Shown in pieces: positions 4,924 to 58,720 of a stretch of 64,000 nt of DNA. The stretch covers positions 1 through 64,000 of IMG/VR virus record IMGVR_UViG_3300050120_000361; one strand, 5' to 3'. The notes beneath the pieces are model-generated. The model worked only from the letters and a program-made list of their open reading frames with translations, searched no databases and had not been told where the DNA came from. The translations under genes were made by a program, and so were the position numbers. Positions within the stretch are counted from its first letter, which is position 1. Every line of letters begins with the position of its first letter.

Positions 4924-4933
4924 GATTTTTATG

Positions 4934-4980
4934 TTTCGTTTTAACCGTCAAAGGCCCAATGCTTGCGCACCGAGCCTATT
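4934..4980 (-). promoter_or_regulatory. cassette hairpin + linker (imperfect stem)
   Basis: shares TTTAACCGTCAAAGGCCCA with 4501-4519. Confidence 0.6.
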
Positions 4981-4990
4981 TTAAAATTCC

Positions 4991-6545: not shown

Positions 6546-6926
6546 TTATGCTACGACCAATTCGGCTTTTGCGGCTTTGGCTTTCGCCTTTGAAGCGCGG
6601 CTTGCCTTGTTGCGGGCCAAACGTGCTTTCTTTTCTTCAGGAGTTTCAACTTTTGCAACTGTTTCGATAACTTCAACCTTGTGGGTTACGGGAACGATTT
6701 TCGCAAGCATTGCGTCCTTAACGCTGTTGGTTGCGGCTTCGATGAACAGGCCCTTGAAAACAGGCAGTTCGATAACGTCTTCTGAACCAGCTTCGATACG
6801 GTCAGCGATTTCGAATGCAACGTCTTTTTTGATGCTCAAACGTTTTGCGGTTGCAACTACGAAGTTTAATTTTGCGCCGAATGATTTAGTTGAATACAAT
6901 GCGGCTGATTTGAATGATGCTTTCAT
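6546..6926 (-). CDS. small protein with Lys/Ala-rich C-terminal tail (putative DNA-binding)
   Basis: 126 aa; tail KKARLARNKASRASKAKAKAAKA; monocistronic. Confidence 0.7.
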   Translation of the reverse strand: MKASFKSAALYSTKSFGAKLNFVVATAKRLSIKKDVAFEIADRIEAGSEDVIELPVFKGLFIEAATNSVKDAMLAKIVPVTHKVEVIETVAKVETPEEKKARLARNKASRASKAKAKAAKAELVVA

Positions 6927-12209: not shown

Positions 12210-12524
12210 CTATATCTCAAGGACTGGTGGGGCCGAGGCTATTATCTCATCGATGAGCTTTTGCTTGCTCTTCTCCGACTTCATCTCCTTCAGCCTCTCG
12301 TACATCACCAGGCTTATCGTGTAGTGTCTGCCCTTGAGGGTGACGGCTATGCTTCCTGTTGGCGTGCGTGGCTTCTTAGCCTTTTCCTCTTTGACTCGAG
12401 CAGTCTGTTCGGCAAGTTTTTGTTCGAGCTCGTTGAACTGGTCTATGTCGAGGTTGTTCCAATCAACCTGTGAAAAGTCGATTATTTCGGTTTCCTTTTG
12501 ACCTTGCGCATTTACGTTGCTCAT
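12210..12524 (-). CDS. early paralogue-family protein (104 aa)
   Basis: shares the C-terminal V-x-I/L-x-G-x2-Y module. Confidence 0.75.
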   Translation of the reverse strand: MSNVNAQGQKETEIIDFSQVDWNNLDIDQFNELEQKLAEQTARVKEEKAKKPRTPTGSIAVTLKGRHYTISLVMYERLKEMKSEKSKQKLIDEIIASAPPVLEI

Positions 12525-13271: not shown

Positions 13272-14123
13272 TTATTGTCTAAATGGGCAAAGTAAACAGG
13301 CGTTTTGACACCTTATCGGGTTCGTGGCGGAAATCACGTTCACTATCGGCTTCCACCTGTTGTTGTTCTCGTATGTTATCAGTTTAGTTATGGTGCCGTC
13401 CCTTTCCGTCCATGAGTTGTTCAGGCCGAACGGAAGCAGTTCGCGCACGCCAATCAGGCTTTCTTCGCCCTTGTCGACCGTCAGTATGGCCTCATACTTC
13501 TTGAGGAGCTTGTAGTAGTCGCGCGTGAAGGACTCGGTCTTTATCAGGTAAGGCATTATTCCCTTGGTTGAGGGGCGCTTGTTTATGTTGTTGTTTGCCA
13601 CCATGTACTTGGTGGCACCCTTCTTCTTGAGGTATTCGGGCTGCGGCTTGTCGTCGGCGTACCTGTAGGAAAGCAGCTGGACCCGAAGGTTCCTGAGCCT
13701 GAGTATCTTGAACTCCGTGAAGACGCGCAGGAGCAGCTCAAGAGCCCTGAGCCCGTTGTCGTTGGACAGGACAGGGTTCACGAAAACCAGCACCTGCTTG
13801 GCCGGGAACCCTCCCCTTATGAGCTTTGCGAGCTGGAAGAACGTCTCCTTTACCGATGGGATGTTCGGCTCGAGCGTGGTTTTGCCCATGCCCGTAATGT
13901 TGACGTGCAGGTATATGCGGGCCTGCTCCCTTATGCAGAACTCCACGAAATCATCGCTGAGCCTCTTGGTGAGTATCACGTTTATCTCCGTAAGCTGGGG
14001 GACCCATGCAAAATTGACATTGCATGGGTCCCCAGACTTCCAGTAGGATATTGTTGGCCTGTCGCGCCACTCCCTTATGTTGGGGAGTTCGTTACGCTGC
14101 CTTAGTTCGCTGAGTGTCGCCAA
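13272..14123 (-). CDS. DUF1848/spore-photoproduct-lyase-like protein
   Basis: ILTK...YLHVNITGMG..LEPNIP...GFP...VNPV and terminal C-x3-C-x2-C (CQNACLLC). Confidence 0.5.
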   Translation of the reverse strand: MATLSELRQRNELPNIREWRDRPTISYWKSGDPCNVNFAWVPQLTEINVILTKRLSDDFVEFCIREQARIYLHVNITGMGKTTLEPNIPSVKETFFQLAKLIRGGFPAKQVLVFVNPVLSNDNGLRALELLLRVFTEFKILRLRNLRVQLLSYRYADDKPQPEYLKKKGATKYMVANNNINKRPSTKGIMPYLIKTESFTRDYYKLLKKYEAILTVDKGEESLIGVRELLPFGLNNSWTERDGTITKLITYENNNRWKPIVNVISATNPIRCQNACLLCPFRQ

Positions 14124-14649
14124 TGCTTATATGGTTAATGTGCTTCAACTCCTCAAAAGAGCGCACGGTTTCAATGCAGCTCTGCTTTATGTGCTCCGGG
14201 TGGAAGGCGGATATGAACTCGAGCACGCCCGTAAGCGCCGTGGGGTTGAAGTGCTTGACGTCCTCGCCGTTCTCCTCAATTCCCCACACGTTGCTTTCAG
14301 CAAGGTATGACAGCACCACCGGCGTGTCCCCGCGCGTGGTGAGCATCAGCTTGGGCATGTCCTTCTGCCTGATGCCTGCTGCGGCAAGCGCCTTTGTGTC
14401 CCTTCCCATCCTGAACATCGTGGCAAGGAACACCTGGTATGGCGTTAGCTTGTCGATGTCGTTGAGGTCGATTTCCTCAATTTTGTTGTTTTTCATTTCT
14501 TCAAAGTTTTTGAACGCCTCGCACAGGTGATGTCTTTTGTGCGTTCGTATTTCCTTACGTGGGCCGCTTTTCACGTCAGGAAATACGAGAGGCTTGTTTT
14601 GGTTACGGCCTTTCCTCTTTCTTTCATCGGTTCGGTTATGGTACCCCAT
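14092..14649 (-). CDS. hypothetical protein
   Basis: 185 aa, follows promoter motif. Confidence 0.7.
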   Translation of the reverse strand: MGYHNRTDERKRKGRNQNKPLVFPDVKSGPRKEIRTHKRHHLCEAFKNFEEMKNNKIEEIDLNDIDKLTPYQVFLATMFRMGRDTKALAAAGIRQKDMPKLMLTTRGDTPVVLSYLAESNVWGIEENGEDVKHFNPTALTGVLEFISAFHPEHIKQSCIETVRSFEELKHINHISIGDTQRTKAA

Positions 14650-14680
14650 GGTAGTAAAATATTTAACTGTGATGTAAATT

Positions 14681-14707
14681 ATATCCTATGGCTTTGGATT
14701 GTATAGG
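14681..14707 (-). promoter_or_regulatory. phage promoter-like motif
   Basis: CCTATAC-N13-AGGATAT. Confidence 0.75.
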
Positions 14708-14755
14708 CTATCAGTTCGGTTTCGAGAAAACTATTTAACTGACTGCTTTGAAGAG

Positions 14756-14989
14756 TTAGCGCCTGTTTTTTGGCTTGAGCAACTCGAGGTCCACTGGCCT
14801 GAAGCCGAGGAAGTAGTCCATTTCAGGCATGAAGACGAAGACCTTGCCCTCTTTTTCGGGACCCATCACGGTTCCCGTCAGGCCAACGAAATACTCGTGC
14901 CCGTCGCCAATTGCTTTGTGGTGCTGTCCGTCGGAAACTGAAACAATTTCGACTTCGTCGCCTTCCTGGTATTCTGGTTCATTACTCAT
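14756..14989 (-). CDS. small SH3/KOW-like beta protein
   Basis: 77 aa; GDEVEIV...GLTGTV...VFV pattern. Confidence 0.5.
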   Translation of the reverse strand: MSNEPEYQEGDEVEIVSVSDGQHHKAIGDGHEYFVGLTGTVMGPEKEGKVFVFMPEMDYFLGFRPVDLELLKPKNRR

Positions 14990-28619: not shown

Positions 28620-30698
28620 CTATTGTTCTACCAGTCCTACCACGGAAGTGTACCCGTTCTCCCACTCCCGCTGCTGGTCTGGGTGCTGGTACGGGTTGAA
28701 CGCTATCCCGTTCTGTCCGTCCTCAACACCCTTGTTGAATGCTATGTCCTTGTACCTCTGGCCGTTCTTCTCGCCTATCCCCCACCCCTGCAGCCATATA
28801 GAGTGCTTGAGCGGCTCCAAAACAACATTGAACGGGTTCTCGTCATCGGTTATGTAGCCCTCTATGCCGGCCTCTATGATCTTCTCCTTCTCGCCGGGCT
28901 CCATTATCAATAGCTCGTCCTTTGCCCTCTCCTCAGCCAGCTGCCAGCCGTCGGCCCACAGCTCGAACTCTTCGGTTGACTTCGCCCTGTCATACGGGTT
29001 CTCGTTCTTGTTGGCGAGAGACTGCACGTAGGCGGTGAAGCCCTCGCACTCAGGGGGCTGAAGGTCCGACAGGCCCATAGTCCTCCTGACGCCCTTTTTA
29101 GGCAGCGTGTCCTCGGCGCGCAGAAGGGAGCATTCGTATATGAAGCCCTGGTCCCATGCCGCGGATGGAGTAAGCAGCCCCTTGCCCAAATCGTCGGTAT
29201 TGCCGAAAGGGTTCTGGTCGAGCGAGCCTCCGTGCTGCTTCCATATCCTGCCGCCCTCGAAGTGCCAGTTCATCTTGTCCTGGTAGCGGGCGTTCCTGCA
29301 GAGCTCTGACTTTGACGCGAGCAGCCACCCCTCCTCCCAGGCCTTAGCGGCCTCGTCGCTCGTGTATGGGTTGTCATCCAAGTCCTTACCCTCCGAGTAG
29401 GCGCCGTGCCCGGTGTGGAAGGCGTTCTCCTGGAACTGCGTGCGGTTGCCGGACTCCTGCTTGGTGTATGCCGCCAGGAACTCGTTGTGCCTGTCTTCCC
29501 AGCCGCGCGTCCATATAGCTATCCGCTCATCCCCGTCCAATGGGCATTCTGTGAGCTGCATTCCTTCAGCGTACTGCCTGCGCCCCATCTCGTACAGTGA
29601 GCTTTCGATAGGCCTTTCGCGCTTGGACTCCGTTTCCCTGCACACCGCATCTGCGGACTTCCAGCCAAGGTCCCACTCGCCCACGAAGCCTATGGCCTTT
29701 ATGGTTTTCATGAAGTCCTTGGCGTAAACCGTGTTCTCTACGAGGTGCGGGTTCGAGCACCTGCGCATGTCGTTGAAGCGGGCCTCGTATCCTGCCTGGA
29801 ACTGCTCAGGCGCGTCCTTTTCGTACACTGGAACCTCGCCAATCACCTTCTTCTCCATTGAGTCGAAACGCTCGGATATGTCCTTGTCGAAAAGTGAACG
29901 CTTTCCCCACCCGGCATTCCACGACTGCCATACGAATGTGTCCAAATCGGACTTGAAAGGCTCGTCACCGACACCGAATGGATTATCCGCTTTTGTAAGC
30001 CCCCTGTCGTACGCCCTCTTGCCCATGTCCCCACAAATAGTGCCAATCTCCCCAGCGGTTTTGTCATTGATGGCGTTCCACATATTCCTAAGCTGTCTGA
30101 GGGTCTTTATCTCCGAATTCGAGAAGGTGAACTCGATGCTGTCGGCGTCAACAAGCCCGATAAGAGGCGTTGCCTTTTTGGACATGAACTCCTTTTCCAT
30201 GGCGGAATTGTTGGCCACGTGCCATCCGTCAGCCCAGTTGGTGGCTGCGTTGTCCTTGGCGTCCGGCGTAACTATCCACGGATTGTCGGTAAGCGCCTTG
30301 CCGGCAACGAACGCCCGCTGGCCCTCATTGTACTGGTTCCCATTGTCCCACCCGATCGACCACATCTTCTGCATCATGCCAGGCCCGAATGGGTTCTTGA
30401 ACTTGTCAATGCCCGTAATAACGGCATCCTTCCAGCCACGAGCCTTGGCCTCGGCGTACTTCTCCTCATTCGCGTTGCGAGGGTTCTCGATGTCAAGCAC
30501 CACCTGACGCTCAACCACATCCGGCTGTATGCTTCCAGCTATCTGGTTCAGAATGTCCTGCTTTGAGTGCTCCATTATGCCGAGTATCTCGTATGGAGTG
30601 AACCCGTCGTTGCGGCGCTTGATGCTCATTGCGCCCTCGCCGTCCTCAACGCTCATGGTGTACACGCGCTTTTTGCTGTCCTTGTTTTCTTTGTCCAT
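28620..30698 (-). CDS. protein with 10 RMF/CrpP-like repeats
   Basis: 10x G-x(8-12)-[NC]P[FYW]-x(7-25)-W-x2-G[WFY]. Confidence 0.75.
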   Translation of the reverse strand: MDKENKDSKKRVYTMSVEDGEGAMSIKRRNDGFTPYEILGIMEHSKQDILNQIAGSIQPDVVERQVVLDIENPRNANEEKYAEAKARGWKDAVITGIDKFKNPFGPGMMQKMWSIGWDNGNQYNEGQRAFVAGKALTDNPWIVTPDAKDNAATNWADGWHVANNSAMEKEFMSKKATPLIGLVDADSIEFTFSNSEIKTLRQLRNMWNAINDKTAGEIGTICGDMGKRAYDRGLTKADNPFGVGDEPFKSDLDTFVWQSWNAGWGKRSLFDKDISERFDSMEKKVIGEVPVYEKDAPEQFQAGYEARFNDMRRCSNPHLVENTVYAKDFMKTIKAIGFVGEWDLGWKSADAVCRETESKRERPIESSLYEMGRRQYAEGMQLTECPLDGDERIAIWTRGWEDRHNEFLAAYTKQESGNRTQFQENAFHTGHGAYSEGKDLDDNPYTSDEAAKAWEEGWLLASKSELCRNARYQDKMNWHFEGGRIWKQHGGSLDQNPFGNTDDLGKGLLTPSAAWDQGFIYECSLLRAEDTLPKKGVRRTMGLSDLQPPECEGFTAYVQSLANKNENPYDRAKSTEEFELWADGWQLAEERAKDELLIMEPGEKEKIIEAGIEGYITDDENPFNVVLEPLKHSIWLQGWGIGEKNGQRYKDIAFNKGVEDGQNGIAFNPYQHPDQQREWENGYTSVVGLVEQ

Positions 30699-30724: not shown

Positions 30725-31255
30725 TTACTTTATCTCTGGAATGTTCACGACCTGCAGAACCTCTGTTCCCATGCGGTGGAGAAACGCACGCGGTGAGTAG
30801 TACCCTATGTCGAATTTGGTCTCATGCTTCTCGATGAACAGGAGCCGGTGTATGCCGACATGGGCAGTCATCTTTGAGCACTGCAGGCACGGCGCGTATG
30901 ACACGTACATTGTCATGTTGTCCAAGTTGCCCCTGTTCTGCATCTTCATGTAGTGAATGGCGGCCTGCTCCTCGGCGTGTATAACGTAGGGTATCGAAAG
31001 CTGGTCGTCCACGTCGTCCTCGCACCTCTGCACGCCCAGGCTGTCGAACATTTTATTGTACCCTATCGACAGCATGACGCCGGTCTTGTGGTCGCCTATT
31101 ATGGCGCCAACCTTCTTCTTGACGGCGGGCGAGAGCATGCGTATCGCGTTCAGCTGCGTTACGAGAAGCTGCTCCTTTACGGTCAGTTTCAAATAGTCTA
31201 TCCTTTTTGTGTCTATGAAGTACTTCTCTCTGTCGAAGCTGAGCTCTTCCGCCAT
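30725..31255 (-). CDS. dCMP deaminase-family protein
   Basis: KVGAII, SIGYN, HAEE, PCLQC; start 31255 after promoter. Confidence 0.85.
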   Translation of the reverse strand: MAEELSFDREKYFIDTKRIDYLKLTVKEQLLVTQLNAIRMLSPAVKKKVGAIIGDHKTGVMLSIGYNKMFDSLGVQRCEDDVDDQLSIPYVIHAEEQAAIHYMKMQNRGNLDNMTMYVSYAPCLQCSKMTAHVGIHRLLFIEKHETKFDIGYYSPRAFLHRMGTEVLQVVNIPEIK

Positions 31256-31284
31256 GTTCAATCGTGTTTTTTGTTGTAAATGAA

Positions 31285-31311
31285 ATATCCCGCAGACCAT
31301 GTAGTTATAGG
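31285..31311 (-). promoter_or_regulatory. phage promoter-like motif overlapped by an inverted repeat
   Basis: CCTATAA-N13-GGGATAT; CCCGCAGACC/GGTCTGCGGG arms. Confidence 0.75.
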
Positions 31312-31353
31312 TCTGCGGGACAGTTTCGGCCCTAAAGTTGCTAACGCCGGGCG

Positions 31354-31737
31354 CTACTTGGCGTTTATCAGCGCCAAAATGTACTTCTGCTTCTGCGCGG
31401 TATCGGCCCTCAAAAGCTTTATCTCGTGCAGCAGAGGCTCCTTGCCGGACTGTTTCAATATCCTGCGGAGTTCCATGTTCTCGCGCTTCAGGCCCGCAAC
31501 CACGACGGAGCGCAGCACGTATGTAGGAAAGAATACCGTGTCCCTGCCGTAGAACACTATGGAAACCTTGCTTGAAGTGTCTCCTCCAGAAATCTCCTGC
31601 TTGTAGGCGTAGTCGATAACCGATTGTGTCAATTGTCGCTGACAGTTCCAGCGCTCGTACCACCCTGTCAGCAGGATGAGGGTTACGGTCCATGCCATTA
31701 CGACTATTTTCTGCTGTTTGTTGAGGTTCAGTTTCAT
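31354..31737 (-). CDS. membrane-anchored protein
   Basis: 127 aa, N-terminal TM. Confidence 0.7.
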   Translation of the reverse strand: MKLNLNKQQKIVVMAWTVTLILLTGWYERWNCQRQLTQSVIDYAYKQEISGGDTSSKVSIVFYGRDTVFFPTYVLRSVVVAGLKRENMELRRILKQSGKEPLLHEIKLLRADTAQKQKYILALINAK

Positions 31738-41738: not shown

Positions 41739-44700
41739 TCAGTTTATGTCTATGTACATGGAACCCTTTTCTGAGGGGATTACTTGAAACGCATGAGTCT
41801 CGAACATCTGCTCGAGGTTGTGGTCTATTACAAAGAGGTTCTTGGACTCAAAGCGGTTCAGAAGCGTTATGAACATCTCCTGATAATTCACTATATTCTC
41901 CTTTTTAGAGAGTTCTTTGCCGCTGTTGAGCTGACCCGAGAGCTCGTCTATGAATATGCATGAAACACTGTTCTTGACATTCAGGGTGGATATGGCGTAT
42001 ATTAGCGCAAGTCCCTGGAATGCTGTTTCCATGCCTGATACGAGCTGAACCGGCCTGAATACGGCGTGGCCGTCTTTCATCTCCACCATGTAAAGCTCGC
42101 CGCTCTCGTCCCAGAACAGTTTGAAGCTGAGCCCCTCAAGCAGCAGGTTGAGCGTGTTGTTCAAAAAGCTCCTGTAGTAGTTGAACACTATGTCCTTAAA
42201 GTCCCGCTTGATGAGCTTCTCGTATATCGCAAAAACCATGGACTTGCGCTGCCACTCCACGTACTCTCTGATGAGCTTCTCATTGGACTCTATCTTGAGT
42301 TCGTGCCTTTGGAGCGCGAGGCTGTGCTGCGCCCGTTGCGTGTTCATGACCGACATTGACTCGTTTTCGTCTCGCTCATTCCTTTCTTGCTCGTCAAGCC
42401 CGGCCACCGCCTCATCCCACATAGGCTCCTTAAGCCTCAGGTTTTCAAGAGTGGATGCCTCCAAAGCGTGTGTCTGCTTCAGCTGGTCAATGCTACGGTT
42501 GTGCTCATCGACAGTGAGGTTGTGCCGGCGCACGGCGTCCAAGGCTTCGTTGTGCGTCTTTAGCCTGTCGCCGTATGACTTCAAATCCTTTGAGTACTTT
42601 TCCGTGGCTTCGGTTGCCGCCCTGACTATTTTCTCAATGCCCTGGTACAGCAGGGCCATCTTGTCTGATGAGTCCTTTGCGCCTTTGGTCCACATATCCA
42701 ATTTGGCCTTGGCACCGGCCTGCTCATCGAACACCAGCAGTGTGGCGTCCTTTCGCAGGGTCACCTCCCGAAGCGCGGCGAGCTTGGTAAGCCTTGCGGT
42801 AATCACGTCCAATTCGATGTACAGGTTCTCATCGGCGCTGTAGTCCTTCTTCTGCTCCTTAGCGGCTTCGGCCGTTGTTTTGAGCCTGTTCCACTTGTCC
42901 CTTGCAGTCACGGTCGCGACAGCCAATGGGCGTATCGCGTCATTGTAGGACGCGTGCTCAGCAAGCACTGTATTCCAGTCGCTTTCAGCCGAGGCCACGC
43001 TTGCAAGTATTCCGTAGGTGTCGACATGCGTCTTCGCCGCTGCGGCGAGGCTTTGCTGCTTTTCCAGTTCAGGAGTGATTTGCGTCAACTCTATCACTAT
43101 CGCCTCATTGTCGTCCTTTAGCCGCTGCTTGAGAACCTCCCAATGCCCGGCATCCCCTGATATTGGTTTATTGCAGGTGGGGCATATGCCCGACTCGAGC
43201 TGATTTTTGTTGGAAGACAGCCTGTCGCTGAGCGCTTTCTGCCTGTCCTTGATTTCCTGGACCTTCTCATTGAATGTCTTTTCCTTGGCCTGCAGGACTT
43301 CGTGCGTTTCCCTCACCGCATCGAGGTAAGCGCCACCTGCGGTGTCAAGCTCTATTTTTGCGGTTGCCGCTGCATTGGCGTAGTCCTGTTCGATGCGCCA
43401 GTACTCCTTTGTAACCTCCTCCCAGCCTCCGTCAATTTCCGCTTGTGTCTGCTTCTCGAGGATGTCCCACATGGCGGCTATGTCATCAGCGTATGCTTCA
43501 TTTACCGTCTTCAGCGCGCCTATTTCATCAGCAAGTATTTCAATCTCTTCCTTATCAGCTTCTTTGGTGTCAGGCTCAATTGGCTCGGTTTCAGTGAATA
43601 TCGGCTCTTCCCGCTTTTCCCTGCTTTCGAATGAGTCCACGGCCGCCTTGGCGTTATCCACCTTGACCTGCTGCTCCTTAATGAGCGTTGGCACGTTGCC
43701 CAATTCGAGCTTTTTCTGGTGGCCCTCGGCTATTGCCCGCCTTATGTGATTGAGCCTGTTTTCTGTGAATGCCTTGGAGTCGTCGAGCAGCTCAATTTTG
43801 TTCTGGGCGGCGTTCCTGTCGGCAATCGCCATTATTATCTCCTCCTTGAGCTGGGTCATGTTCACCTTTGGCTTAACGAGGTCGTAGTATGACTTGACCG
43901 ACGCGAGGTTGCCTTCAAGCACCTGCAGGTAGTCTACGCCTATGTAGTTCAGGACCATTTGGGTCAGCTCCGCGGGCGGCATGTTCAGCATCGACAGTAT
44001 CTTCGCCTGGTTCAGTATCATTATGGTATTCGGAACCTCACCGAACCATCTGTCCAATAGCTGCTGGGCCTCGTCGCCTATCTTCTCCACTGGCTCCGCG
44101 CCCTCCTTGTGAACCTGAAGCTTCAGGTTCCGCGTCACGCCGCTCACGTACTGCTTCCAATTCAGGGAGCGCTTCATCTCGTCTGTGGTGTTCTGCTTCC
44201 ACGCGCGCTGCGCCCAGCGTATCGCGTGCACCTTTGTGCCGTTTGCGCGGAATATGAGCCTTACCATTATGGTGTCAATCTCCGGAAGCTTGTCGTTGAA
44301 CAGGTGCAGTGAGTTCTGAACCTTCTTGGCCTTCGGCATGCCCTCCATTATCTCGTCCTTCAGCACCCACCGCAGCATATTGTACATGGTGGTCTTGCCT
44401 ATTCCATTGGTGCCGGTTATGCGTGTCAGTCCTGGTATGTTCAGCTTTATCTTGTTTTTGCCGAGGGCCATGAAGCAGTTGCACTCGATGCTCTCGAGCT
44501 CGTTCACGTAGTTTGAGGTCTTGGTCAATGAGTTCGAGAGTTGCTCAGAGAACAATTGCCTTATCTCGGCCAGTATCTCATTGACGTCCTCCTCCTCAAC
44601 GAACTCCTTCTCAATCGTTTTCTTGTGTCCTTCGAGCACCTTGACGAACAGTGCGTGCAGCTTGGCCTCATCGAGTACCATCTCATCCATGGTTTCTTCA

Positions 44701-45827
44701 GGCTCTTCACCCTCTCCTTCCGTAACGGCCTCAGTAGGTTGGACTTCGCTTTGGTTCATTACGAACTTGTCGTACTGGCAGTTAACTGAAACGGTTCCCA
44801 TCCGCTGCGAGCCGAGCTCGTGCGTCACGCGTATCAGTTCGAGCTCGTGCTTTGAGTAGGTGCTCGAGAGCTTGAACTTTATGAACGTGTTGCACGTTCC
44901 CCAAACGCTGTCGAGCCTGAGCACCGCGAGAACCTGCTGCAGCCAGTTCTCAGAAACCGATGAGGTAGTCATGTCGAACGTCACGTAGCTTATCAGGTTT
45001 GTAAGCGGCTCATCCCTTACGGTCCATGAGCCGTTCTCGATGTCTATTATCTTGACTACCTTTTGGTCGCCTACCGCCAGTCCGGGCTTGTTGCGGACCT
45101 TGGCGAATGTGCCCTCGGAGTGGTCGCGCTGTATAGGCGAGCCTGGATATATGAAGGTTTTGGACTTGTCGATGCTCTGGACCGTCCAGTTCACGTGAAT
45201 GTCCCCTGCGAGGGTAAGCGTGGAGAGGAAGTCCTCAACGGACGCGAGCCTCTCGTACCTGTCCTTCTTTACCGGAAGCTTTGTGGCGTCAACGTACTCC
45301 CGCAGAATGTCGTGGTACACGCATATGTTGAAGGTGTAGGGGTCTATGCCTTCCGCCTTGATGTTAGCCCCGTTTGACGGCCCGTCCTCCAAAGAGTAGG
45401 AAATCCATCCGAGCCCTTCAACCCGTGACCTGTAGTACCGCTGCTCCTTCAGGTAGGTCACCTTCTTGCTGAGCTCGGGCTCAAGCTTGTCTATGAACGA
45501 CTTGAACGTGTCAACGGCGTTGTGCCCCTTCTCGGCCTCAAGCGCCTTCCGCATGTCGTGAAGGTCGTGGTTGCCGTTCATTACGCAAATCTCAACCAGG
45601 GTGGGTATCGCAAGGCATTCTGACAGGTGGTTGTATATCGCCTTCTTCTCAGCGTCATTCGAGGCCGCATACTCCGTAAGGTCGCCGGCCAGCAGGTATA
45701 CCTCAACGCCCTCGCGAACGATAATGTCCCGTATCTCCGCAAGCACAGAGGCGTACGGCTTGGTCAGGTCCCGCTCGCGCAGCTTGACCTGGATGTCTGC
45801 TGTGTGCAGTATTCTTGTTTTCAGCAT
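41739..45827 (-). CDS. fused SbcD/Mre11 nuclease - SbcC/Rad50 ATPase (gp47-gp46-like)
   Basis: HTADIQ, AGDL, GNHD, AGDIH; GTNGIGKTT, coiled coil with CPTC hook, VSGME signature, FIDE Walker B. Confidence 0.9.
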   Translation of the reverse strand: MLKTRILHTADIQVKLRERDLTKPYASVLAEIRDIIVREGVEVYLLAGDLTEYAASNDAEKKAIYNHLSECLAIPTLVEICVMNGNHDLHDMRKALEAEKGHNAVDTFKSFIDKLEPELSKKVTYLKEQRYYRSRVEGLGWISYSLEDGPSNGANIKAEGIDPYTFNICVYHDILREYVDATKLPVKKDRYERLASVEDFLSTLTLAGDIHVNWTVQSIDKSKTFIYPGSPIQRDHSEGTFAKVRNKPGLAVGDQKVVKIIDIENGSWTVRDEPLTNLISYVTFDMTTSSVSENWLQQVLAVLRLDSVWGTCNTFIKFKLSSTYSKHELELIRVTHELGSQRMGTVSVNCQYDKFVMNQSEVQPTEAVTEGEGEEPEETMDEMVLDEAKLHALFVKVLEGHKKTIEKEFVEEEDVNEILAEIRQLFSEQLSNSLTKTSNYVNELESIECNCFMALGKNKIKLNIPGLTRITGTNGIGKTTMYNMLRWVLKDEIMEGMPKAKKVQNSLHLFNDKLPEIDTIMVRLIFRANGTKVHAIRWAQRAWKQNTTDEMKRSLNWKQYVSGVTRNLKLQVHKEGAEPVEKIGDEAQQLLDRWFGEVPNTIMILNQAKILSMLNMPPAELTQMVLNYIGVDYLQVLEGNLASVKSYYDLVKPKVNMTQLKEEIIMAIADRNAAQNKIELLDDSKAFTENRLNHIRRAIAEGHQKKLELGNVPTLIKEQQVKVDNAKAAVDSFESREKREEPIFTETEPIEPDTKEADKEEIEILADEIGALKTVNEAYADDIAAMWDILEKQTQAEIDGGWEEVTKEYWRIEQDYANAAATAKIELDTAGGAYLDAVRETHEVLQAKEKTFNEKVQEIKDRQKALSDRLSSNKNQLESGICPTCNKPISGDAGHWEVLKQRLKDDNEAIVIELTQITPELEKQQSLAAAAKTHVDTYGILASVASAESDWNTVLAEHASYNDAIRPLAVATVTARDKWNRLKTTAEAAKEQKKDYSADENLYIELDVITARLTKLAALREVTLRKDATLLVFDEQAGAKAKLDMWTKGAKDSSDKMALLYQGIEKIVRAATEATEKYSKDLKSYGDRLKTHNEALDAVRRHNLTVDEHNRSIDQLKQTHALEASTLENLRLKEPMWDEAVAGLDEQERNERDENESMSVMNTQRAQHSLALQRHELKIESNEKLIREYVEWQRKSMVFAIYEKLIKRDFKDIVFNYYRSFLNNTLNLLLEGLSFKLFWDESGELYMVEMKDGHAVFRPVQLVSGMETAFQGLALIYAISTLNVKNSVSCIFIDELSGQLNSGKELSKKENIVNYQEMFITLLNRFESKNLFVIDHNLEQMFETHAFQVIPSEKGSMYIDIN

Positions 45828-46111
45828 TTTATGAGTGGTTTAGCTTTTTCGTATTTGTCCGCGTACAGATGCGGTAGGTTGTACTCGAATGTCTTGAACG
45901 ACTCGAGTATTTTCCACTTATCAGTGAGCGACACTATGTCGCCGTACATTATGCACAAATCCCTTCCACTATCAGATAGTGGAAGGGCGGTTAGTTTGAT
46001 GCGCTTTTCGTAGTTGGTTTCGGTTACGGCTTCCGCCGTGAAATCCAGTATATGCCCCGTGGGGAAGACGGCTATGGCCTCACGAGCCTGAAGCGTGAGT
46101 ATCGTTATCAT
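45821..46111 (-). CDS. hypothetical protein
   Basis: 96 aa. Confidence 0.65.
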   Translation of the reverse strand: MITILTLQAREAIAVFPTGHILDFTAEAVTETNYEKRIKLTALPLSDSGRDLCIMYGDIVSLTDKWKILESFKTFEYNLPHLYADKYEKAKPLIKC

Positions 46112-46335
46112 GGCTTAATCAGTGTATCGAACTTTGAGGCGGCTTCAGTCCTTATATGGGCGAGTATCTCCTTACCCCTATCGGACAGGCACCGCATTGT
46201 TGGATTAAATGCATGGTCCAACAGGCCCCTGTTATGCATTGACCTAAGGTCGCTTTCGAGCATTAGTGGAGGCATCTCACTGTTCTCCTCGAGCCACAGC
46301 ATTGCTATAAGCTCGGCATTGGTCATATCCCTCAT
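46108..46335 (-). CDS. hypothetical protein
   Basis: 75 aa, ATGA coupling. Confidence 0.65.
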   Translation of the reverse strand: MRDMTNAELIAMLWLEENSEMPPLMLESDLRSMHNRGLLDHAFNPTMRCLSDRGKEILAHIRTEAASKFDTLIKP

Positions 46336-46892
46336 ATGCTTCCAAAGTTTGGTATCTCCCTGTTGTAGTTTTCAAGCTTGGTGAGCTTTTCGTTCATGAT
46401 TATCTCGGCCTGCGTGTCGCTGAACCTGAAAAGGGCGCACAGCCTGTAGATATGGCACCTTACCTCCATGATGCCCTCGGCCATCGGGCCGAAGTCCTTT
46501 GTCGACTTGCGCTTTGTCACAAACTGCACGAGCATGCGCGCGAGTGCCGTGAAAGAGGAGACCGAGTTGAAGGTTCCGGAACTGTGCTCCCAATGCCCGT
46601 GCATCTCAATCTCCTTATCGATTTCCATGCGGTCCTTTATCAGTATGTCCTTTTCAGGGCTGCCGTGCCTTTCCTGCATAGCGGCGATAACGAGCATCAC
46701 GTCGCAGAGTTCCACGCAAACGTCATGGACTTGCTTGCGCCTGCCTACCTTAACGTCCGCGAACTTCAGGTACTTAAGAAGCTCCTCGGACAGTTCGAGA
46801 AGCTCCTCGGACGCCTTCATCAGCAGGTACTGGTCCGAGTGCTTGGAAGTTGCGTTCAGGAGGCGCTGCTTGACTGTACTGCTGAGTATCAT
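46332..46892 (-). CDS. MazG-like NTP pyrophosphohydrolase (tandem domains)
   Basis: KASEELLEL...VELCDV motif plus degenerate second copy; start 46892. Confidence 0.7.
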   Translation of the reverse strand: MILSSTVKQRLLNATSKHSDQYLLMKASEELLELSEELLKYLKFADVKVGRRKQVHDVCVELCDVMLVIAAMQERHGSPEKDILIKDRMEIDKEIEMHGHWEHSSGTFNSVSSFTALARMLVQFVTKRKSTKDFGPMAEGIMEVRCHIYRLCALFRFSDTQAEIIMNEKLTKLENYNREIPNFGSI

Positions 46893-47149
46893 TCGCCTTC
46901 TCCTTCCGCCTTCTTCTTGGCCTTTTCGTACTTCTTCTTGGTGTACGACACGACCCCGCGAAGGCTGCTGAACGTCATTCGGAACGGTATCCAGATGGGG
47001 CATGTAAGCAGGGTGTACTTCACTATTATTACCACAAGCCACCAAACGGCCGGCAGTATCAGGAACATCCACCAGTGGTTGAAGCCGGTGATGTCATCCT
47101 TGACGCCTTCGAGCATGTACTGAAGGTAGTCGGTTAGCAGTTTCTCCAT
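46889..47149 (-). CDS. small membrane protein
   Basis: 86 aa, hydrophobic core. Confidence 0.7.
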   Translation of the reverse strand: MEKLLTDYLQYMLEGVKDDITGFNHWWMFLILPAVWWLVVIIVKYTLLTCPIWIPFRMTFSSLRGVVSYTKKKYEKAKKKAEGEGE

Positions 47150-47153
47150 AGCG

Positions 47154-47975
47154 TTACATTTTCGTTGGCGGTACGATGCGTCTCCAGTGCGTTATGTCCT
47201 TGTTGTCGTACGCCCAGCCCGTGTTGTTCCAGGTCTGGTACTGCTGCTTCTTGCAGCCCGCGCGGTAAACCTCGTACTTTCCGTACTCCTTAGGCTTATC
47301 GTCTACCATCCTTACCCATCCTTTGTCCTCAAGGCTTGCCGGCGCAGTGCTGGCAGTCTCGACATCGGCCACAGGGTCGCACCGAAGAAGGTCCACGAAG
47401 CGGTACCCGTGTATGTTGCCCTCTGATGGCTGGTGGACCTCCTCGTTCAGTTCACGCCAGCCGTAGGGCCAGTCAGGCATTCCAGGAAATATTACGTACT
47501 CATTGTCTCCATGCGCATAAACCGTGGTGGCAATAACTGTCATGTGGAACACATCTATTACGTCCATTTCCAGAAACTTGGACCATATCTCAGAGCCTCC
47601 TATTACGTATGCGGTCATTGCCCTTTCATTGCCCTCCTGCATCAGCGCCCCAGCGAACAGCTGCGAGGCTATCTGCAAAGCACGCTCAGGGCTGTTCACG
47701 AGTATGGTCTCCCCATCAACCTGGTACCCCACGCGACGTGAAATCACTATGTTGTACCTGTCCTTCAGCGCTTTGCTGCCCATGCTCTCATAGGTCTTGC
47801 TGCCCATTATGACTATATTGCCCGTGGTTAACGCTTTGAAGCGGGCCATATCCGCCTTTTGCGTGCCGAATTTCCACGGCAACCGGCCGTTAATTCCCAC
47901 CACATTGTCGGCAGTTGTTGCCCCTATGCCGTGCACCGCCATTTTCGGCACCGCCCTGTTCTCATTCTCAATCAT
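47154..47975 (-). CDS. folA: dihydrofolate reductase with DUF551-like C-terminal domain
   Basis: VVGINGRLPW, DMARFK, IMGSKTY, L..R.NIVIS, IGGSEI; tail ends ITHWRRIVPP. Confidence 0.9.
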   Translation of the reverse strand: MIENENRAVPKMAVHGIGATTADNVVGINGRLPWKFGTQKADMARFKALTTGNIVIMGSKTYESMGSKALKDRYNIVISRRVGYQVDGETILVNSPERALQIASQLFAGALMQEGNERAMTAYVIGGSEIWSKFLEMDVIDVFHMTVIATTVYAHGDNEYVIFPGMPDWPYGWRELNEEVHQPSEGNIHGYRFVDLLRCDPVADVETASTAPASLEDKGWVRMVDDKPKEYGKYEVYRAGCKKQQYQTWNNTGWAYDNKDITHWRRIVPPTKM

Positions 47976-48015
47976 TGTCAGTGAATTTAGTGTAACTAAT
48001 TTTTGGTGTGGAAAC

Positions 48016-48052
48016 AAAAAAGGGCCCCACAGATTGCTCTCGGGACCCGTTT
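48016..48052 (-). terminator. terminator after acidic protein
   Basis: GGGCCCC/GGGACCC stem with sense-strand U6 tract. Confidence 0.55.
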
Positions 48053-48091
48053 CTCTGGTTAAACAAATCGGTTCAATCCTAAAACCGAAGG

Positions 48092-48310
48092 TTAGTCTTC
48101 TGAAGCCGTGTCGGCGTCTTCGTCTTCGTCTTCGGCGTCAGACGGGTCTGCGTCATCCTCGGTCAAATCCTCATCGGCCGGTTCGGCGTCAGACAAATCG
48201 TCATCGGATGTTGCGGCTTCGTCTCCGCCAGTTGTTTCTTCAGCTGCTTCGCTGGTTCCAGTTGTTTCTTCGTTTTCGTCGAATTGCTCTTCGCCTTGGT
48301 TGATGTTCAT
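48092..48310 (-). CDS. hyper-acidic 72-aa protein
   Basis: 33 D/E, no K/R/H; own promoter and terminator. Confidence 0.75.
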   Translation of the reverse strand: MNINQGEEQFDENEETTGTSEAAEETTGGDEAATSDDDLSDAEPADEDLTEDDADPSDAEDEDEDADTASED

Positions 48311-48361
48311 CGCTTTTGGATTTTGTTGTTTATGGTTTTTGTTAGTTACTTATTAGTATTC

Positions 48362-48390
48362 ATATCCCATTGGGCTTTACGGTTATAGGG
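48362..48390 (-). promoter_or_regulatory. phage promoter-like motif
   Basis: CCCTATAA-N14-GGGATAT. Confidence 0.75.
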
Positions 48391-48406
48391 CGGCGGACCG
48401 CAAATT

Positions 48407-49327
48407 TTAATACCCTCCCGGCCTGTTCTGACGCTCTATGTTGTGCGCGTTCTTGCTGAAATACATATTCACAATGTCCTGCATTCCCATTCCCATAACC
48501 TTAGCCATTTTGAGCAGTGCCACAAGGGCCTCGCACCACACGGAATGTATTTCCTGCTCCTCAACGAATGTTCTTTCGCCCATTGGTGAGCCATTTATAA
48601 AGTCGAACAATATCAAATACTGCTGCTGCCACTCCTTCTGCCTGTTGTCAATGTATGTCAGCAACATCGCATTGTTGCTTCGGTACGACTCCCACGGCGC
48701 ACCCTTGCCTATGTGGGCATACATCGAAAGCGACCAAGCGGGCATGCCCGTACCTCCAAAACGTGGCGCGCCCTTGACCGTTGAGCCGTAGGCCATCCAG
48801 ATGTCCCTTCCCTCTATTCCGAAAGCGTGCCCAACGTTGAAGTGAAAGTGCAGCAGGTCTATCAGTTCAAACCAAGCCTCAAGCCTGTCAGTATCCGTAA
48901 GATGCGAAAAGCCGTCGGCCTGCGCCTTTTTGTGGTCTGATTTCCATGTCTTCCAGAAAGCCATGCCCCACTTGGACATTCCGCCAAGGGCTGTATACAA
49001 TTCTCTGATTTCGTCCTGTTGAGCGTTCCAGTTCCAATTCACGAATTCCATCAGCTTATTCTCATCCGCTTGCAAGGAGTCAAAGTCTATTTTGTAAACG
49101 TCTCGCTGCACCTCGTATTGAAGCTGGTATATTGCTCCCAAACCGTCTCTGCCACTACGGGCGAGTTCAGACCATTTGTCAATTACTTGCAGGCCGGCGC
49201 ACGACTGAAAGTTCGCTGCTATGCCCTTTTCCGTTTCAAGCGTGAATTCTTCTGATTTAAAAGCATCCGGCATCCCGTCCATCATTTGGACCAGCCTGTC
49301 ATCATCCATGTTTTTTCTTTCTTCCAT
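48407..49327 (-). CDS. dimeric (all-alpha) dUTPase
   Basis: DEIREL, FWKTWK, ELIDLLHF, Y..KN..N..RQ..GY. Confidence 0.8.
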   Translation of the reverse strand: MEERKNMDDDRLVQMMDGMPDAFKSEEFTLETEKGIAANFQSCAGLQVIDKWSELARSGRDGLGAIYQLQYEVQRDVYKIDFDSLQADENKLMEFVNWNWNAQQDEIRELYTALGGMSKWGMAFWKTWKSDHKKAQADGFSHLTDTDRLEAWFELIDLLHFHFNVGHAFGIEGRDIWMAYGSTVKGAPRFGGTGMPAWSLSMYAHIGKGAPWESYRSNNAMLLTYIDNRQKEWQQQYLILFDFINGSPMGERTFVEEQEIHSVWCEALVALLKMAKVMGMGMQDIVNMYFSKNAHNIERQNRPGGY

Positions 49328-49331
49328 AATA

Positions 49332-50288
49332 TCAAACGGCTATTTTCGCTGGTATGTGCGGGTATGACTTGTAGTCGTAAATCTTGAGGTCTTGCAGGCC
49401 GTTTTCGAGCATGTCGTCCAGCCAGTGGTCTACCTCGAAGTCCCTGCGCGTGTAGGACGGCGCTATGAACAGGCTCGTCTTCCTCCCTATGAGCCTTTCC
49501 GGGTCGTTAACCCAATTGTCGAGGTACTTCCGCACGGCCTCCTCGTGGTTGAGGTACATGTGGTAGTCGGCTATCTGATAGTGTATGTGGCCGCACGGTA
49601 TGCCCACCATTTCGGATATTGCCCTGAAGAACATCGTGAAAAGCACGAAGTCGTACGGTATTCCCAGAAAGCTGTCGCCGCTTCGCTGCGTGACGTGCAT
49701 GTCCATCATAGGCGCGTCAGTCTCCTGGTCCAGATACACGCCCACCTGGTACATTAGGTGGCACGGCGGAAGCTTCTGCAGGTGGAGTTCCGTAGGGTTC
49801 CACAGGCTCATCATGTGGCGCCTGCTGTCCGGGTTGTTGCGTATGGAGTTTATCAGGTCTGAGAACTGGTCCTTTCCGCCGAAGTCGCGCATCTGCTTCC
49901 CGTATATAGGGCCCAACTGACCGTTCTCGTCCGCCCAGTCGTCCCAGTAGTGCACGTTGCGCTCGTGCAGGAACTGCAAGTCCGTGCGGCCCTTCATCAT
50001 CCAGAAAGCCTCAATGAATATCTTCTCTCCGTGTATCTTCTTGCCGTTCAGCATTGGAAGCGCCCCCTCGCGCACGTCGAGTCGGAAGTGCTGCCCCTGA
50101 ACCTTAATGGTTCCCGTTCCCGTGCGGTCCGCCGAGGGCCTTCCGTAGTTGAGCAGGTTGACGAGCGATGCCGCGTACTGCGCCTCGAAGTTCTCTTGAA
50201 ACAGCGTATCGTATCGGTCGGACTGCTGTATGAGGTATTGACCCATTTTGTGGGTTTCAAACCATTTTAGGTTTTTGCTGTTTTCCAT
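49332..50288 (-). CDS. thyA: thymidylate synthase
   Basis: DRTGTGT, WD.WA, LGPIYG.Q.R, DSRR, LPPCH, QRSGD.FLG.P.D. Confidence 0.95.
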   Translation of the reverse strand: MENSKNLKWFETHKMGQYLIQQSDRYDTLFQENFEAQYAASLVNLLNYGRPSADRTGTGTIKVQGQHFRLDVREGALPMLNGKKIHGEKIFIEAFWMMKGRTDLQFLHERNVHYWDDWADENGQLGPIYGKQMRDFGGKDQFSDLINSIRNNPDSRRHMMSLWNPTELHLQKLPPCHLMYQVGVYLDQETDAPMMDMHVTQRSGDSFLGIPYDFVLFTMFFRAISEMVGIPCGHIHYQIADYHMYLNHEEAVRKYLDNWVNDPERLIGRKTSLFIAPSYTRRDFEVDHWLDDMLENGLQDLKIYDYKSYPHIPAKIAV

Positions 50289-57758: not shown

Positions 57759-57983
57759 TTATTGCTCCTTGAGTACTGGGTTATTGTATATGTTGTCCTC
57801 TGTCACTATGTGGACTGCTGACGGGTTCAGGAGGACGTTTCCCTGTATGGTGCTGAATATCACCGCCTTGCCGTTGTTCCTTATCAGGTCTCCCATAAGG
57901 TCATGGAAGTTGTTCCTGCCGATTTCCTGTATCTCCTGGTTCGGCTGCATCGCGAAGTACTTGGTTTTTTCTGACATGTTCAA
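57759..57983 (-). CDS. hypothetical protein
   Basis: 74 aa. Confidence 0.7.
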   Translation of the reverse strand: MNMSEKTKYFAMQPNQEIQEIGRNNFHDLMGDLIRNNGKAVIFSTIQGNVLLNPSAVHIVTEDNIYNNPVLKEQ

Positions 57984-58720
57984 TCGGTTATTTCAACAGT
58001 GTAATTAATAAGTGCTATGTAAACATTATCGGTTATAAAGCCTTTCCATTTTTCAGCAAGCTCTTTCAGCTTAGTCTCCTTTTGCTCCTTATACCAAAGA
58101 AAGGCTTCTTCGGGTGTCGCGCACAGTGGCCCAAAAATCTTCTTGCCGTTATTGTCTAAAAGCTGTCCCCTGTAATATTTACCGTTAAGCATTACTCCAA
58201 TAGGTAAAACACCCCTTGCGCCATCGCTTTTGCAGAAGAAGTTGTTTATCTCCTTCGGCACGAAGCAGCACCTGAGCGGATGGTATGCCTTGTTGCCTTT
58301 TACGAGAATGTCCTTGTCCAGCTCCCAACCCTCAACGTAGTTCTCTTCGAACCAGTCGCCGAAAACCTGGAAATCAGCCCATCCCTTGAATACTGCTGTT
58401 TCAGCGTATGTCGGATTTCTTCCATGCAGCTTCTTGTCCATTACCCTCCTAATCATTGCCTGCCAAACAACATACTTTACGCAGGGTTTTTGGTCAACAT
58501 TGCATTTGTGCTTTCCTATACCCAAATAGCCAAAACCGTATATGTTCGGTATGTATGGGTTCCTGACCTTTCCACCAAGCAGGTTGCTGTACGACACCTT
58601 TTCAACCACGTGGCCGTCGTCAAACCTTACGGTTGCATCGTGCGGCCCCTTGTATTCTATTATCTCAAGAAACATGCCATTACCCATTTGCATTCGCTTT
58701 CCAGTAAAGTCTCTTGCCAT
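57980..58720 (-). CDS. HNH-like/AP2-domain homing-endonuclease-like protein
   Basis: W..M..R, W.DFQ.F.DWF, LDKDIL..GNK.Y....C.FVP..IN, AP2-like tail; AT-rich. Confidence 0.75.
   Translation of the reverse strand: MARDFTGKRMQMGNGMFLEIIEYKGPHDATVRFDDGHVVEKVSYSNLLGGKVRNPYIPNIYGFGYLGIGKHKCNVDQKPCVKYVVWQAMIRRVMDKKLHGRNPTYAETAVFKGWADFQVFGDWFEENYVEGWELDKDILVKGNKAYHPLRCCFVPKEINNFFCKSDGARGVLPIGVMLNGKYYRGQLLDNNGKKIFGPLCATPEEAFLWYKEQKETKLKELAEKWKGFITDNVYIALINYTVEITD

What the first reader, a model, noticed from the sequence alone, without database searches (positions are those of the whole stretch)
48092..48310. 72-aa protein with 33 acidic and zero basic residues in its own transcription unit
Seen: 33 D/E of 72, no K/R/H, one aromatic residue; own promoter (48362), terminator (48016) and high-expression-type codons, inserted between dUTPase and DHFR. 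Established: phage DNA mimics (Ocr, Arn, Ugi) are acidic but folded, whereas this sequence looks intrinsically disordered. Inference: a polyanionic decoy that titrates nucleic-acid-binding defence proteins, or a chaperone/partner for the Lys-rich proteins (prothymosin/H1-like pairing with 6546-6926).
Basis: partly seen in the sequence, partly recalled or inferred. Interest (0 to 1): 0.66.

Follow-up and report, generated by a model that had tools for sequence, protein, structure and literature searches.

The report
Disordered hyper-acidic orphan phage protein
A 208-kb phage from peat carries a stand-alone gene, with its own promoter and terminator, for a 72-residue protein that is nearly half Asp/Glu, has no basic residue and is predicted fully disordered; no relative was found, and it most likely mimics nucleic acid, though this is untested.

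Summary
ORF 48092-48310(-) encodes 72 aa with 17 D + 16 E, no K/R/H and one Phe. It is the only such ORF among about 3,600 six-frame ORFs of this phage and its relatives.

It has a lineage-specific tripartite promoter (CCTATA-N15/16-GGATAT-N8/9-TAAG), which is 25 vs 1.3 enriched in the genome and conserved in two relatives. It also has an A-rich, SD-less leader typical of this genome, and a strong intrinsic terminator. The claim of "high-expression codons" fails: GAA is 81% here vs 29% genome-wide, and GC3 is 0.51 vs 0.71.

AlphaFold2 and the ESM Atlas model both give pure coil. Pfam, PHROGs, NCBIfam, PDB, the word search, an exhaustive phmmer over 1.84 billion proteins and a metagenome scan found no relative.

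The gene lies in a hypervariable island between the conserved thymidylate synthase and SbcCD genes. No available relative (DNA polymerase 45-61% identical) has a counterpart.

The closest known analogue is the disordered, basic-free, 57% D/E ssDNA-mimic segment of SPO1 Gp44, which binds RNA polymerase. There is no sequence similarity, and here the segment stands alone.

Best reading: an accessory host-takeover or counter-defence polyanion (confidence about 0.3). Neither translation nor function is shown. No RNA data exist, and the three samples carry identical DNA.

The parts
48362..48389 (-). Phage-specific promoter core: CCTATA (48389-48384), 16-nt spacer, GGATAT (48367-48362)
   Evidence: The motif occurs 25 times in the genome against 1.3 in shuffles. 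Sites cluster at 5.6-31 kb, with this one isolated site. It is conserved in relatives G004 (7 vs 0.7) and G001 (4 vs 0), upstream of orthologous genes.
48349..48352 (-). Third promoter element TAAG, 9 nt after GGATAT (probable initiation region)
   Evidence: The same (A/C)TAAG lies 7-9 nt downstream of GGATAT at most strict sites. Its role as the start-site region is inferred.
48311..48348 (-). A-rich leader without a Shine-Dalgarno sequence
   Evidence: 27 A in the last 45 nt. It contains AACAAAA, the most enriched upstream 7-mer of the genome. The start-context PWM score is at the 87th percentile of long genes, and 0.4% of random ATGs reach it. The genome generally lacks SD sequences.
48092..48310 (-). 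CDS of the 72-aa hyper-acidic protein (stop codon included)
   Evidence: Searches give the sequence and composition. JGI called it as a gene in 3 samples. Codon-position composition is strong: G 64% at position 1, A/C 86% at position 2. It is predicted to be coil.
48105..48278 (-). Internal in-frame repeats: a 30-nt duplication (EETTG..EAA twice), three 36-nt-spaced copies, and (GAAGAC)x3.3
   Evidence: All repeat spacings (6, 30, 36, 51, 99 nt) are multiples of three.
48068..48088 (-). First small hairpin directly after the stop codon
48012..48057 (-). Intrinsic terminator: A-tract, GGGTCCC/GGGGCCC stem (48048-48022), T6 (48021-48016), then GTTT
   Evidence: RNA fold -29.1 kcal/mol against -20.8 +/- 3 in shuffles, z = -2.77. 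The consensus scan missed it because the loop is longer than 8 nt.

Best explanation
This is a real, lineage-specific accessory gene. It is transcribed as a roughly 340-nt monocistronic unit from a phage-lineage promoter of the early/middle (replication-gene) class, and closed by its own intrinsic terminator. The product is a 72-residue intrinsically disordered polyanion with net charge about -33, no basic residue and almost no hydrophobic residues.

Its charge spacing is about one carboxylate per 8 Angstrom of contour, close to that of single-stranded nucleic acid. The most likely mechanism is therefore a flexible nucleic-acid mimic. It would bind competitively to the cationic DNA/RNA-binding surfaces of host proteins (RNA polymerase, HU-like nucleoid proteins, or nuclease-type defence proteins) and keep them off DNA. 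In other words, it would be a host-takeover or counter-defence effector working by polyelectrolyte competition rather than by a folded shape.

Shown: composition, promoter, leader, terminator, predicted disorder, orphan status and location in a variable island.
Inferred: translation, binding, and the targets.
For: - Gene signals: promoter, start context, terminator, gene call in 3 samples, in-frame repeats, codon-position periodicity.
- Physical nature: 46% D/E with no K/R/H; coil in AF2 and in the ESM Atlas model; charge spacing 1 per 7.9 Angstrom.
- Accessory status: the core order 1413-aa helicase-like / 538-aa / TS / SbcCD is conserved in all relatives. The TS-SbcCD interval, however, ranges from 0.26 to 5.9 kb and holds unrelated genes. 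This is typical of phage accessory and anti-defence hot spots (established knowledge).
- Timing: the same promoter class drives DNA polymerase and other replication-arm genes in G004, and small left-arm ORFs here. That fits expression before late genes.
- Precedent: SPO1 Gp44 residues 56-122 are 57% D/E, lack K/R/H, are disordered, contain two internal repeats, behave like ssDNA and bind RNAP beta/beta' (PMC8208478). E. coli MsyB (pI 3.6) binds HU more tightly than dsDNA does (bioRxiv 10.1101/2025.02.25.640118).
Against: - No expression data: no RNA run holds the phage.
- No population variation with which to test purifying selection.
- No counterpart in any available relative, so there is no evidence of retention over time.
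- Codon usage is atypical for the phage.
- The open frame alone is weak evidence in a T-poor stretch (P = 0.08).
- Gp44 needs its folded DNA-binding N-domain and its C-domain for activity, and both are absent here.
- No partner has been identified, and the one complex prediction gave no verdict.
Confidence: 0.3

Rival explanations
1. Not a functional protein gene. It is a GA-rich low-complexity stretch that happens to be open, transcribed (or not) as a short non-coding RNA or spacer between the NTP pyrophosphatase and DHFR genes.
For: - Atypical codon usage: GAA 81% vs 29%, GC3 0.51 vs 0.71.
- Two frames of the opposite strand are also open.
- The frame is open in 8% of shuffles.
- It is absent from all relatives.
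- No homologue exists anywhere.
Against: - A promoter sits at the usual distance from the ATG: 52 nt, against 26-55 nt for other genes of the class.
- The start context is at the 87th percentile.
- The terminator follows right after the stop codon.
- All internal repeats keep the frame.
- No Rfam family reaches threshold.
- The gene caller accepts it.
Confidence: 0.2
2. A translated but young ORF that grew by in-frame repeat expansion inside a variable island. It is tolerated because a soluble polyanion is harmless, and it has no selected function yet.
For: - Internal duplications and a hexanucleotide array.
- Orphan status.
- Atypical codons.
- Location in a hypervariable island.
Against: It carries a complete, well-matched tripartite promoter and a dedicated terminator. 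That is more regulatory investment than expected for a neutral ORF. The complete absence of K/R/H over 72 residues suggests that composition is constrained.
Confidence: 0.15
3. An electrostatic partner or chaperone of a basic phage protein (prothymosin/H1-like pairing). One candidate is the 126-aa protein at 6546-6926, which has a K/A-rich C-terminal tail. The acidic protein would keep it soluble or off DNA until needed.
For: - Both genes use the same promoter class.
- Both are lineage-specific: neither has a tblastn hit in relatives.
- Both prefer GAA and have low GC3.
- The 126-aa protein ends in a predicted long K/A-rich helix.
Against: - The 126-aa protein is only 19% K/R, net about +9, which is a poor charge match for -33.
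- The genes lie 41 kb apart.
- About a dozen other genes share the promoter class.
- The complex prediction scored 0.00, which counts as no verdict.
Confidence: 0.12
4. An acidic tether for the phage's nucleotide-metabolism enzymes. It would be analogous to the disordered acidic C-terminal domain of T4 gp32, which recruits replisome and dNTP-synthetase proteins. Alternatively it is a sink for Mg2+, Ca2+ or polyamines.
For: It sits between TS, a gp56-like NTP pyrophosphatase and DHFR. Both flanking enzymes carry extra N- or C-terminal extensions beyond their catalytic domains. High carboxylate density binds cations (general chemistry).
Against: Its promoter class differs from what is seen in front of its neighbours, and it is insulated by its own terminator. 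Relatives keep TS without any such protein. No binding motif such as a hydrophobic C-terminal tip is present.
Confidence: 0.1

Closest known systems
Central acidic domain (residues 56-122) of Bacillus phage SPO1 Gp44, a host-takeover protein (PMC8208478)
   Same: A stretch of about 70 residues, extremely D/E-rich (57% there, 46% here; 62% in the C-terminal half here). It has no K/R/H, is intrinsically disordered, is built from internal repeats, and is encoded by a large lytic phage in an early-type region. In Gp44 it acts as a flexible ssDNA mimic that binds RNAP beta/beta'.
   Different: There is no sequence similarity (BLASTP E = 91). In Gp44 the acidic segment is embedded between a folded DNA-binding N-domain and a C-domain that are both needed for activity. 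Here the polyanion is the whole protein. The residue palette differs: E/V-rich in Gp44, D/E/A/T/S-rich here. The target here is unknown.
Folded phage DNA-mimic proteins (T7 Ocr, T7 gp5.9, T4 Arn, PBS2 Ugi, phi29 p56, ArdA)
   Same: Small, very acidic, encoded by phages or mobile elements, often early genes, and acting by occupying DNA-binding sites (own knowledge).
   Different: Those proteins have stable folds that fix carboxylates in a DNA-like geometry. This protein is predicted to be pure coil, matches none of their Pfam or PHROG families, and matches no PDB sequence.
Eukaryotic prothymosin-alpha (polyanionic IDP that pairs with histone H1)
   Same: About half acidic residues, almost no hydrophobic or aromatic residues, and fully disordered.
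   Different: No homology. It comes from a different domain of life. A basic partner in the phage or host is not established (one search gave no verdict).
E. coli MsyB, an acidic (pI 3.6) inhibitor of HU (bioRxiv 10.1101/2025.02.25.640118)
   Same: A small, highly acidic protein that competes with DNA for a nucleoid protein and has a disordered acidic tail.
   Different: MsyB has a globular N-terminal domain and specific motifs. No sequence match was found.

Membership tests
Folded DNA-mimic proteins (Ocr / ArdA / Arn / Ugi / gp5.9) | Sequence or profile membership in one of the described families | tested here: not met
   No hit in Pfam, PHROGs or NCBIfam. The PDB sequence search gave only E > 6 noise.
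Folded DNA-mimic proteins (Ocr / ArdA / Arn / Ugi / gp5.9) | A stable fold that places carboxylates in a DNA-like array | tested here: not met
   AF2 gives no helix or strand, with pTM 0.12. The ESM Atlas model has pLDDT 0.23 and pTM 0.08. Both are single-sequence predictions, so this is not proof of disorder.
Folded DNA-mimic proteins (Ocr / ArdA / Arn / Ugi / gp5.9) | Binds the DNA-binding site of a target protein | not testable with these tools
   Needs biochemistry.
Gp44-type disordered acidic ssDNA-mimic segment | About 70 residues with roughly 50% D/E and no K/R/H | tested here: met
   33 of 72 residues are D/E and none is K/R/H. The Gp44 figures come from PMC8208478.
Gp44-type disordered acidic ssDNA-mimic segment | Intrinsic disorder and internal repeats | tested here: met
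   Coil predictions. In-frame repeats with 30-nt and 36-nt spacing.
Gp44-type disordered acidic ssDNA-mimic segment | Sequence homology to Gp44 | tested here: not met
   BLASTP E = 91 against Gp44 residues 50-130.
Gp44-type disordered acidic ssDNA-mimic segment | Flanking folded DNA-binding N-domain and C-domain required for inhibition | tested here: not met
   The ORF is bounded by an in-frame stop 39 nt upstream of the ATG and by its own stop codon. Several in-frame stops separate it from the upstream gene.
Gp44-type disordered acidic ssDNA-mimic segment | Binds RNAP beta/beta' and is toxic on expression | not testable with these tools
   The host is unknown (peat metagenome).
Prothymosin-like polyanion paired with a basic partner | Forms a complex with a lysine-rich partner (the candidate at 6546-6926) | tested here: inconclusive
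   Complex prediction scored 0.00 and gave no verdict. The partner is only 19% K/R.
Phage head scaffold / internal acidic proteins | Encoded in the structural module and conserved among relatives | tested here: not met
   The gene lies in the replication/nucleotide arm and has the early/middle-type promoter. The conserved acidic structural-arm protein is a different gene, at genome 193414-194829, with counterparts in all four relatives.

The most novel reading that the evidence does not exclude
A free-standing, fully disordered 'phage prothymosin': a protein that is nothing but a polyanionic chain, made early in infection. It would neutralise host nucleic-acid-binding proteins (RNAP, nucleoid proteins or nuclease defences) by non-stereospecific polyelectrolyte complexation. 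That would be a class of host-takeover or anti-defence effector with no fold and no conserved sequence, and therefore invisible to homology- and structure-based searches.
Probability: 0.2. Interest if true: 0.75.

Novelty: new variant of a known kind. Interest (0 to 1): 0.45.

Why it matters
Suppose a bare disordered polyanion is enough to disarm host DNA- or RNA-binding proteins. Anti-defence and host-takeover catalogues are built on homology and predicted folds, so they would systematically miss a whole class of effectors. Such proteins could instead be found by composition plus regulatory context, as was done here. The gene also offers a minimal 72-residue system for studying polyelectrolyte competition with nucleic acids in bacteria.

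Independently of the gene's function, the work defines two things:
- a conserved tripartite promoter of a poorly known jumbo-phage lineage;
- a hypervariable accessory island between TS and SbcCD, where further accessory genes can be looked for.

Tried and rejected
- **Homology.** All of these were blank: Pfam, PHROGs and NCBIfam, tblastn against 50,697 phage records, the word search of 5.8 billion proteins, exhaustive phmmer over 1.84 billion representatives, ESM Atlas features and structure, PDB sequences and a JGI metagenome scan. HMMER's bias correction, BLAST's low-complexity filter and the short length all reduce sensitivity for such a sequence. A diverged relative could therefore have been missed.
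- **Population test.** The three JGI contigs and three Logan runs are letter-identical over the locus, so dN/dS cannot be computed.
- **Expression.** No RNA run holds the phage.
- **Close relatives.** Megablast against phages and peptide-pattern scans of IMG/VR with the flanking genes found nothing. The closest relative (DNA polymerase 73% identical, a 196.5-kb JGI contig) could not be fetched because the sample file is too large. A scan of GTDB genomes found none.
- **Sigma-70 consensus promoter scan.** No site was found upstream of the ORF. This was superseded by the genome-specific motif.
- **Read-through fusion with the upstream pyrophosphatase.** The two ORFs are in the same frame. This idea was rejected because several in-frame stops lie between them.
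- **Paralogy with the phage's other acidic proteins.** Only low-complexity matches were found, E >= 0.03 with filters off.
- **Rfam.** The only hit was sub-threshold: BjrC68 over the terminator hairpins, 18 bits against a cut-off of 39.
- **Complex prediction of the acidic protein with the 126-aa K/A-tailed protein.** No verdict; this is not evidence either way.
- **AF2 of the 126-aa protein.** Confidence was too low (pLDDT 54) for a fold search.

Full report
**What is there.** On the minus strand, 48310..48092 is an ATG-to-TAA frame of 72 codons. The product has 17 Asp and 16 Glu, no Lys, Arg or His, and one aromatic residue (Phe10). The rest is Ala, Thr, Ser, Gly, Asn, Gln, Pro and two Leu. 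The C-terminal half is denser in charge than the N-terminal half (21 against 12 acidic residues).

The window is the first 64 kb of a complete 208,538-bp virus record with direct terminal repeats, assembled from a peat metagenome. Within that genome the protein is an extreme outlier: 46% D/E against 25% for the next most acidic protein. I scanned all six-frame ATG ORFs of at least 35 codons for D+E >= 30% with K/R/H <= 5%. This returned only this ORF among 1,044 in the phage, and one borderline 58-aa ORF among 2,210 in four related genomes.

**Is it a gene?** Several independent signals say yes.

1. *Promoter.* Upstream regions of this genome carry a bipartite motif, CCTATA-N15/16-GGATAT. It occurs 25 times against 1.3 in shuffles. 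Most sites lie 26-55 nt before the start codons of small genes between 5.6 and 31 kb. A third element, (A/C)TAAG, follows GGATAT after 7-9 nt at most sites and here. The motif is also enriched in two distant relatives of very different base composition: G004 at 31% GC (7 vs 0.7) and G001 at 24% GC (4 vs 0). There it stands before orthologues of the same genes, for example the homologues of 7404-8165 and 12210-12524, and before the DNA polymerase gene. It is therefore a genuine lineage-specific promoter of the early/middle, replication-arm class.
2. *Leader.* The genome has almost no Shine-Dalgarno sequences and uses A-rich leaders. A position weight matrix of the 30 nt before the starts of 136 long genes puts this ORF at the 87th percentile of real genes. 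Only 0.4% of random ATGs score as high.
3. *Terminator.* After the stop codon come a small hairpin and then a GC-rich hairpin (48048..48022) followed by T6-G-T3 ending at 48012. The fold is -29.1 kcal/mol, z = -2.8.
4. *Reading frame.* All internal repeats have spacings that are multiples of three: a 30-nt duplication, three copies 36 nt apart, further spacings of 51 and 99 nt, and (GAAGAC)x3.3. Codon positions are strongly differentiated.
5. *Gene call.* JGI's pipeline called the same 72-aa gene in three samples.

Some evidence points the other way.
- The frame is open in 8% of composition-matched shuffles, and two frames of the opposite strand are open as well.
- Codon choice is unlike the phage's norm: GAA 13 of 16 Glu against 29% genome-wide, GC3 0.51 against 0.71, 4.5 sd below expectation. 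The genes that share this bias are a low-GC3 minority that includes probable mobile genes.
- No transcript or peptide evidence exists: no RNA run holds the phage.
- The DNA of the three samples is identical, so selection cannot be measured.

**Physical nature.** AlphaFold2 from the single sequence gives no secondary structure at all, with pTM 0.12. The ESM Atlas holds the sequence with pLDDT 0.23 and pTM 0.08. With 33 negative charges, no positive charges and five non-Ala hydrophobic residues, the chain should be an expanded polyelectrolyte. At 3.6 Angstrom per residue this gives one charge per 7.9 Angstrom, which is in the range of single-stranded nucleic acid (inference).

**Relatives and context.** No search found a relative of the protein. 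These methods are weak on short, biased sequences, so I looked for positional counterparts instead. The phage's split family-B DNA polymerase has many metagenomic relatives at up to 87% identity. Those whose DNA could be fetched are distant: polymerase 45-61% identical, GC 21-43%. Gene order is largely collinear.

The block 1413-aa helicase-like / 538-aa / thymidylate synthase / SbcD-SbcC fusion is conserved. The interval between TS and SbcCD, however, is hypervariable:
- 0.26 kb in L053, 0.9 kb in G004, 1.5 kb in L054, 2.2 kb in L059 and 5.9 kb in G002, each with unrelated ORFs;
- 3.5 kb here, holding seven genes: the gp56-like NTP pyrophosphatase, the acidic ORF, DHFR, and four small ORFs.

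No relative has a hyper-acidic, basic-free ORF in that island or anywhere else. The other acidic protein of the lineage, in the structural arm at genome 193414-194829, is conserved in all relatives and unrelated to this ORF. So the gene is a lineage-specific accessory gene in a variable island. The closest relative (73% polymerase identity) could not be fetched.

**Mechanism.** Nothing here measures function, so what follows is inference from anatomy and precedent. The best precedent is not Ocr, Arn or Ugi but SPO1 Gp44. Its residues 56-122 are 57% D/E, have no K/R/H, are disordered by NMR and simulation, and contain two repeats. They are described as a flexible ssDNA mimic that binds RNAP beta and beta' (PMC8208478). 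The present protein shares those properties but has no sequence similarity to Gp44. It also lacks Gp44's flanking domains, which are needed for Gp44's toxicity. E. coli MsyB shows that a very acidic protein can out-compete dsDNA for HU.

I therefore favour an early/middle-expressed polyanionic nucleic-acid mimic that sequesters cationic host nucleic-acid-binding proteins (confidence about 0.3). The rivals are:
- a non-coding or spurious ORF (0.2);
- a young, translated but unselected repeat-expanded ORF (0.15);
- a partner or chaperone of a basic phage protein (0.12);
- a tether for nucleotide-metabolism enzymes, or a cation sink (0.1).

But it is only 19% K/R, with a K/A-rich tail of about 30 residues. 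The complex prediction returned no verdict, and its own model is of low confidence.

**Verdict.** The codon claim is not. The function remains open. In kind, this is a new variant of a known idea: a stand-alone version of a disordered acidic DNA-mimic segment. Interest is moderate, because no relative, transcript or partner backs the functional reading.

Noticed in passing
window 5678-31285 plus 48362; genome-wide list; relatives G004 and G001: A tripartite promoter, CCTATA-N15/16-GGATAT-N8-TAAG, is conserved across a jumbo-phage lineage whose genomes range from 24% to 53% GC. This suggests a phage-encoded specificity factor. A 121-aa ORF conserved in all relatives (genome 180639-181004, L065) gives a weak Sigma70_r2 hit (E = 0.01) and is a candidate for that factor.
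   Followed up: partly
window 28620-30698 (-): A 692-aa protein carries a ribosome modulation factor (RMF, PF04957) domain at residues 425-458 (E = 8e-23). An RMF domain embedded in a large phage protein is unusual and hints at manipulation of ribosome hibernation.
   Followed up: no
window 486-5188 (-): Each gene in this stretch is preceded by a terminator-like GC hairpin followed immediately by TTTAATTGGTAAGAAACAAA. This is a second, distinct regulatory or processing motif class at the left end of the genome.
   Followed up: no
window 45828-49331: The interval between the thymidylate synthase and SbcCD genes is a hypervariable accessory island. Its length (0.26-5.9 kb) and its content differ in every relative examined.
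   Followed up: yes
window 48407-49327, 49332-50288, 30725-31693: A T4 gp56-like dCTPase/dUTPase-family pyrophosphatase, a TS-family enzyme and a dCMP-deaminase-like protein occur together. This set could serve a modified-pyrimidine pathway. The TS-family enzyme was not tested for hydroxymethylase signatures.
   Followed up: no
genome 173942-175474 and 177486-178757 (L010:9942-11474 and 13486-14757): The family-B DNA polymerase is split into two genes, separated by a 287-aa acidic low-complexity protein and a 325-aa protein. The split and the intervening genes are conserved in the relatives.
   Followed up: partly
window 41739-45827 (-): A single 1362-aa protein fuses an SbcD-like phosphoesterase (Metallophos, N-terminus) with an SbcC/SMC-like ATPase.
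   Followed up: no
window 57980-58720; genome 196885-197829 and 189010-189645: Genes with very low GC3 (0.23-0.52) and a GAA/AAA preference match one and the same locus of relative G001. They are probably mobile (homing-endonuclease-like) gene copies.
   Followed up: no
window 47154-47975 (-): The DHFR domain ends at about residue 200 of the 273-aa protein. A C-terminal extension of about 75 residues has no family match.
   Followed up: no
genome 83063-83145 and 99361-99432 (-): The phage encodes tRNA-Leu(GAG) and tRNA-Gln(UUG). The latter reads CAA, a codon that is rare in the phage (14%) but is used for both Gln residues of the acidic ORF.
   Followed up: no
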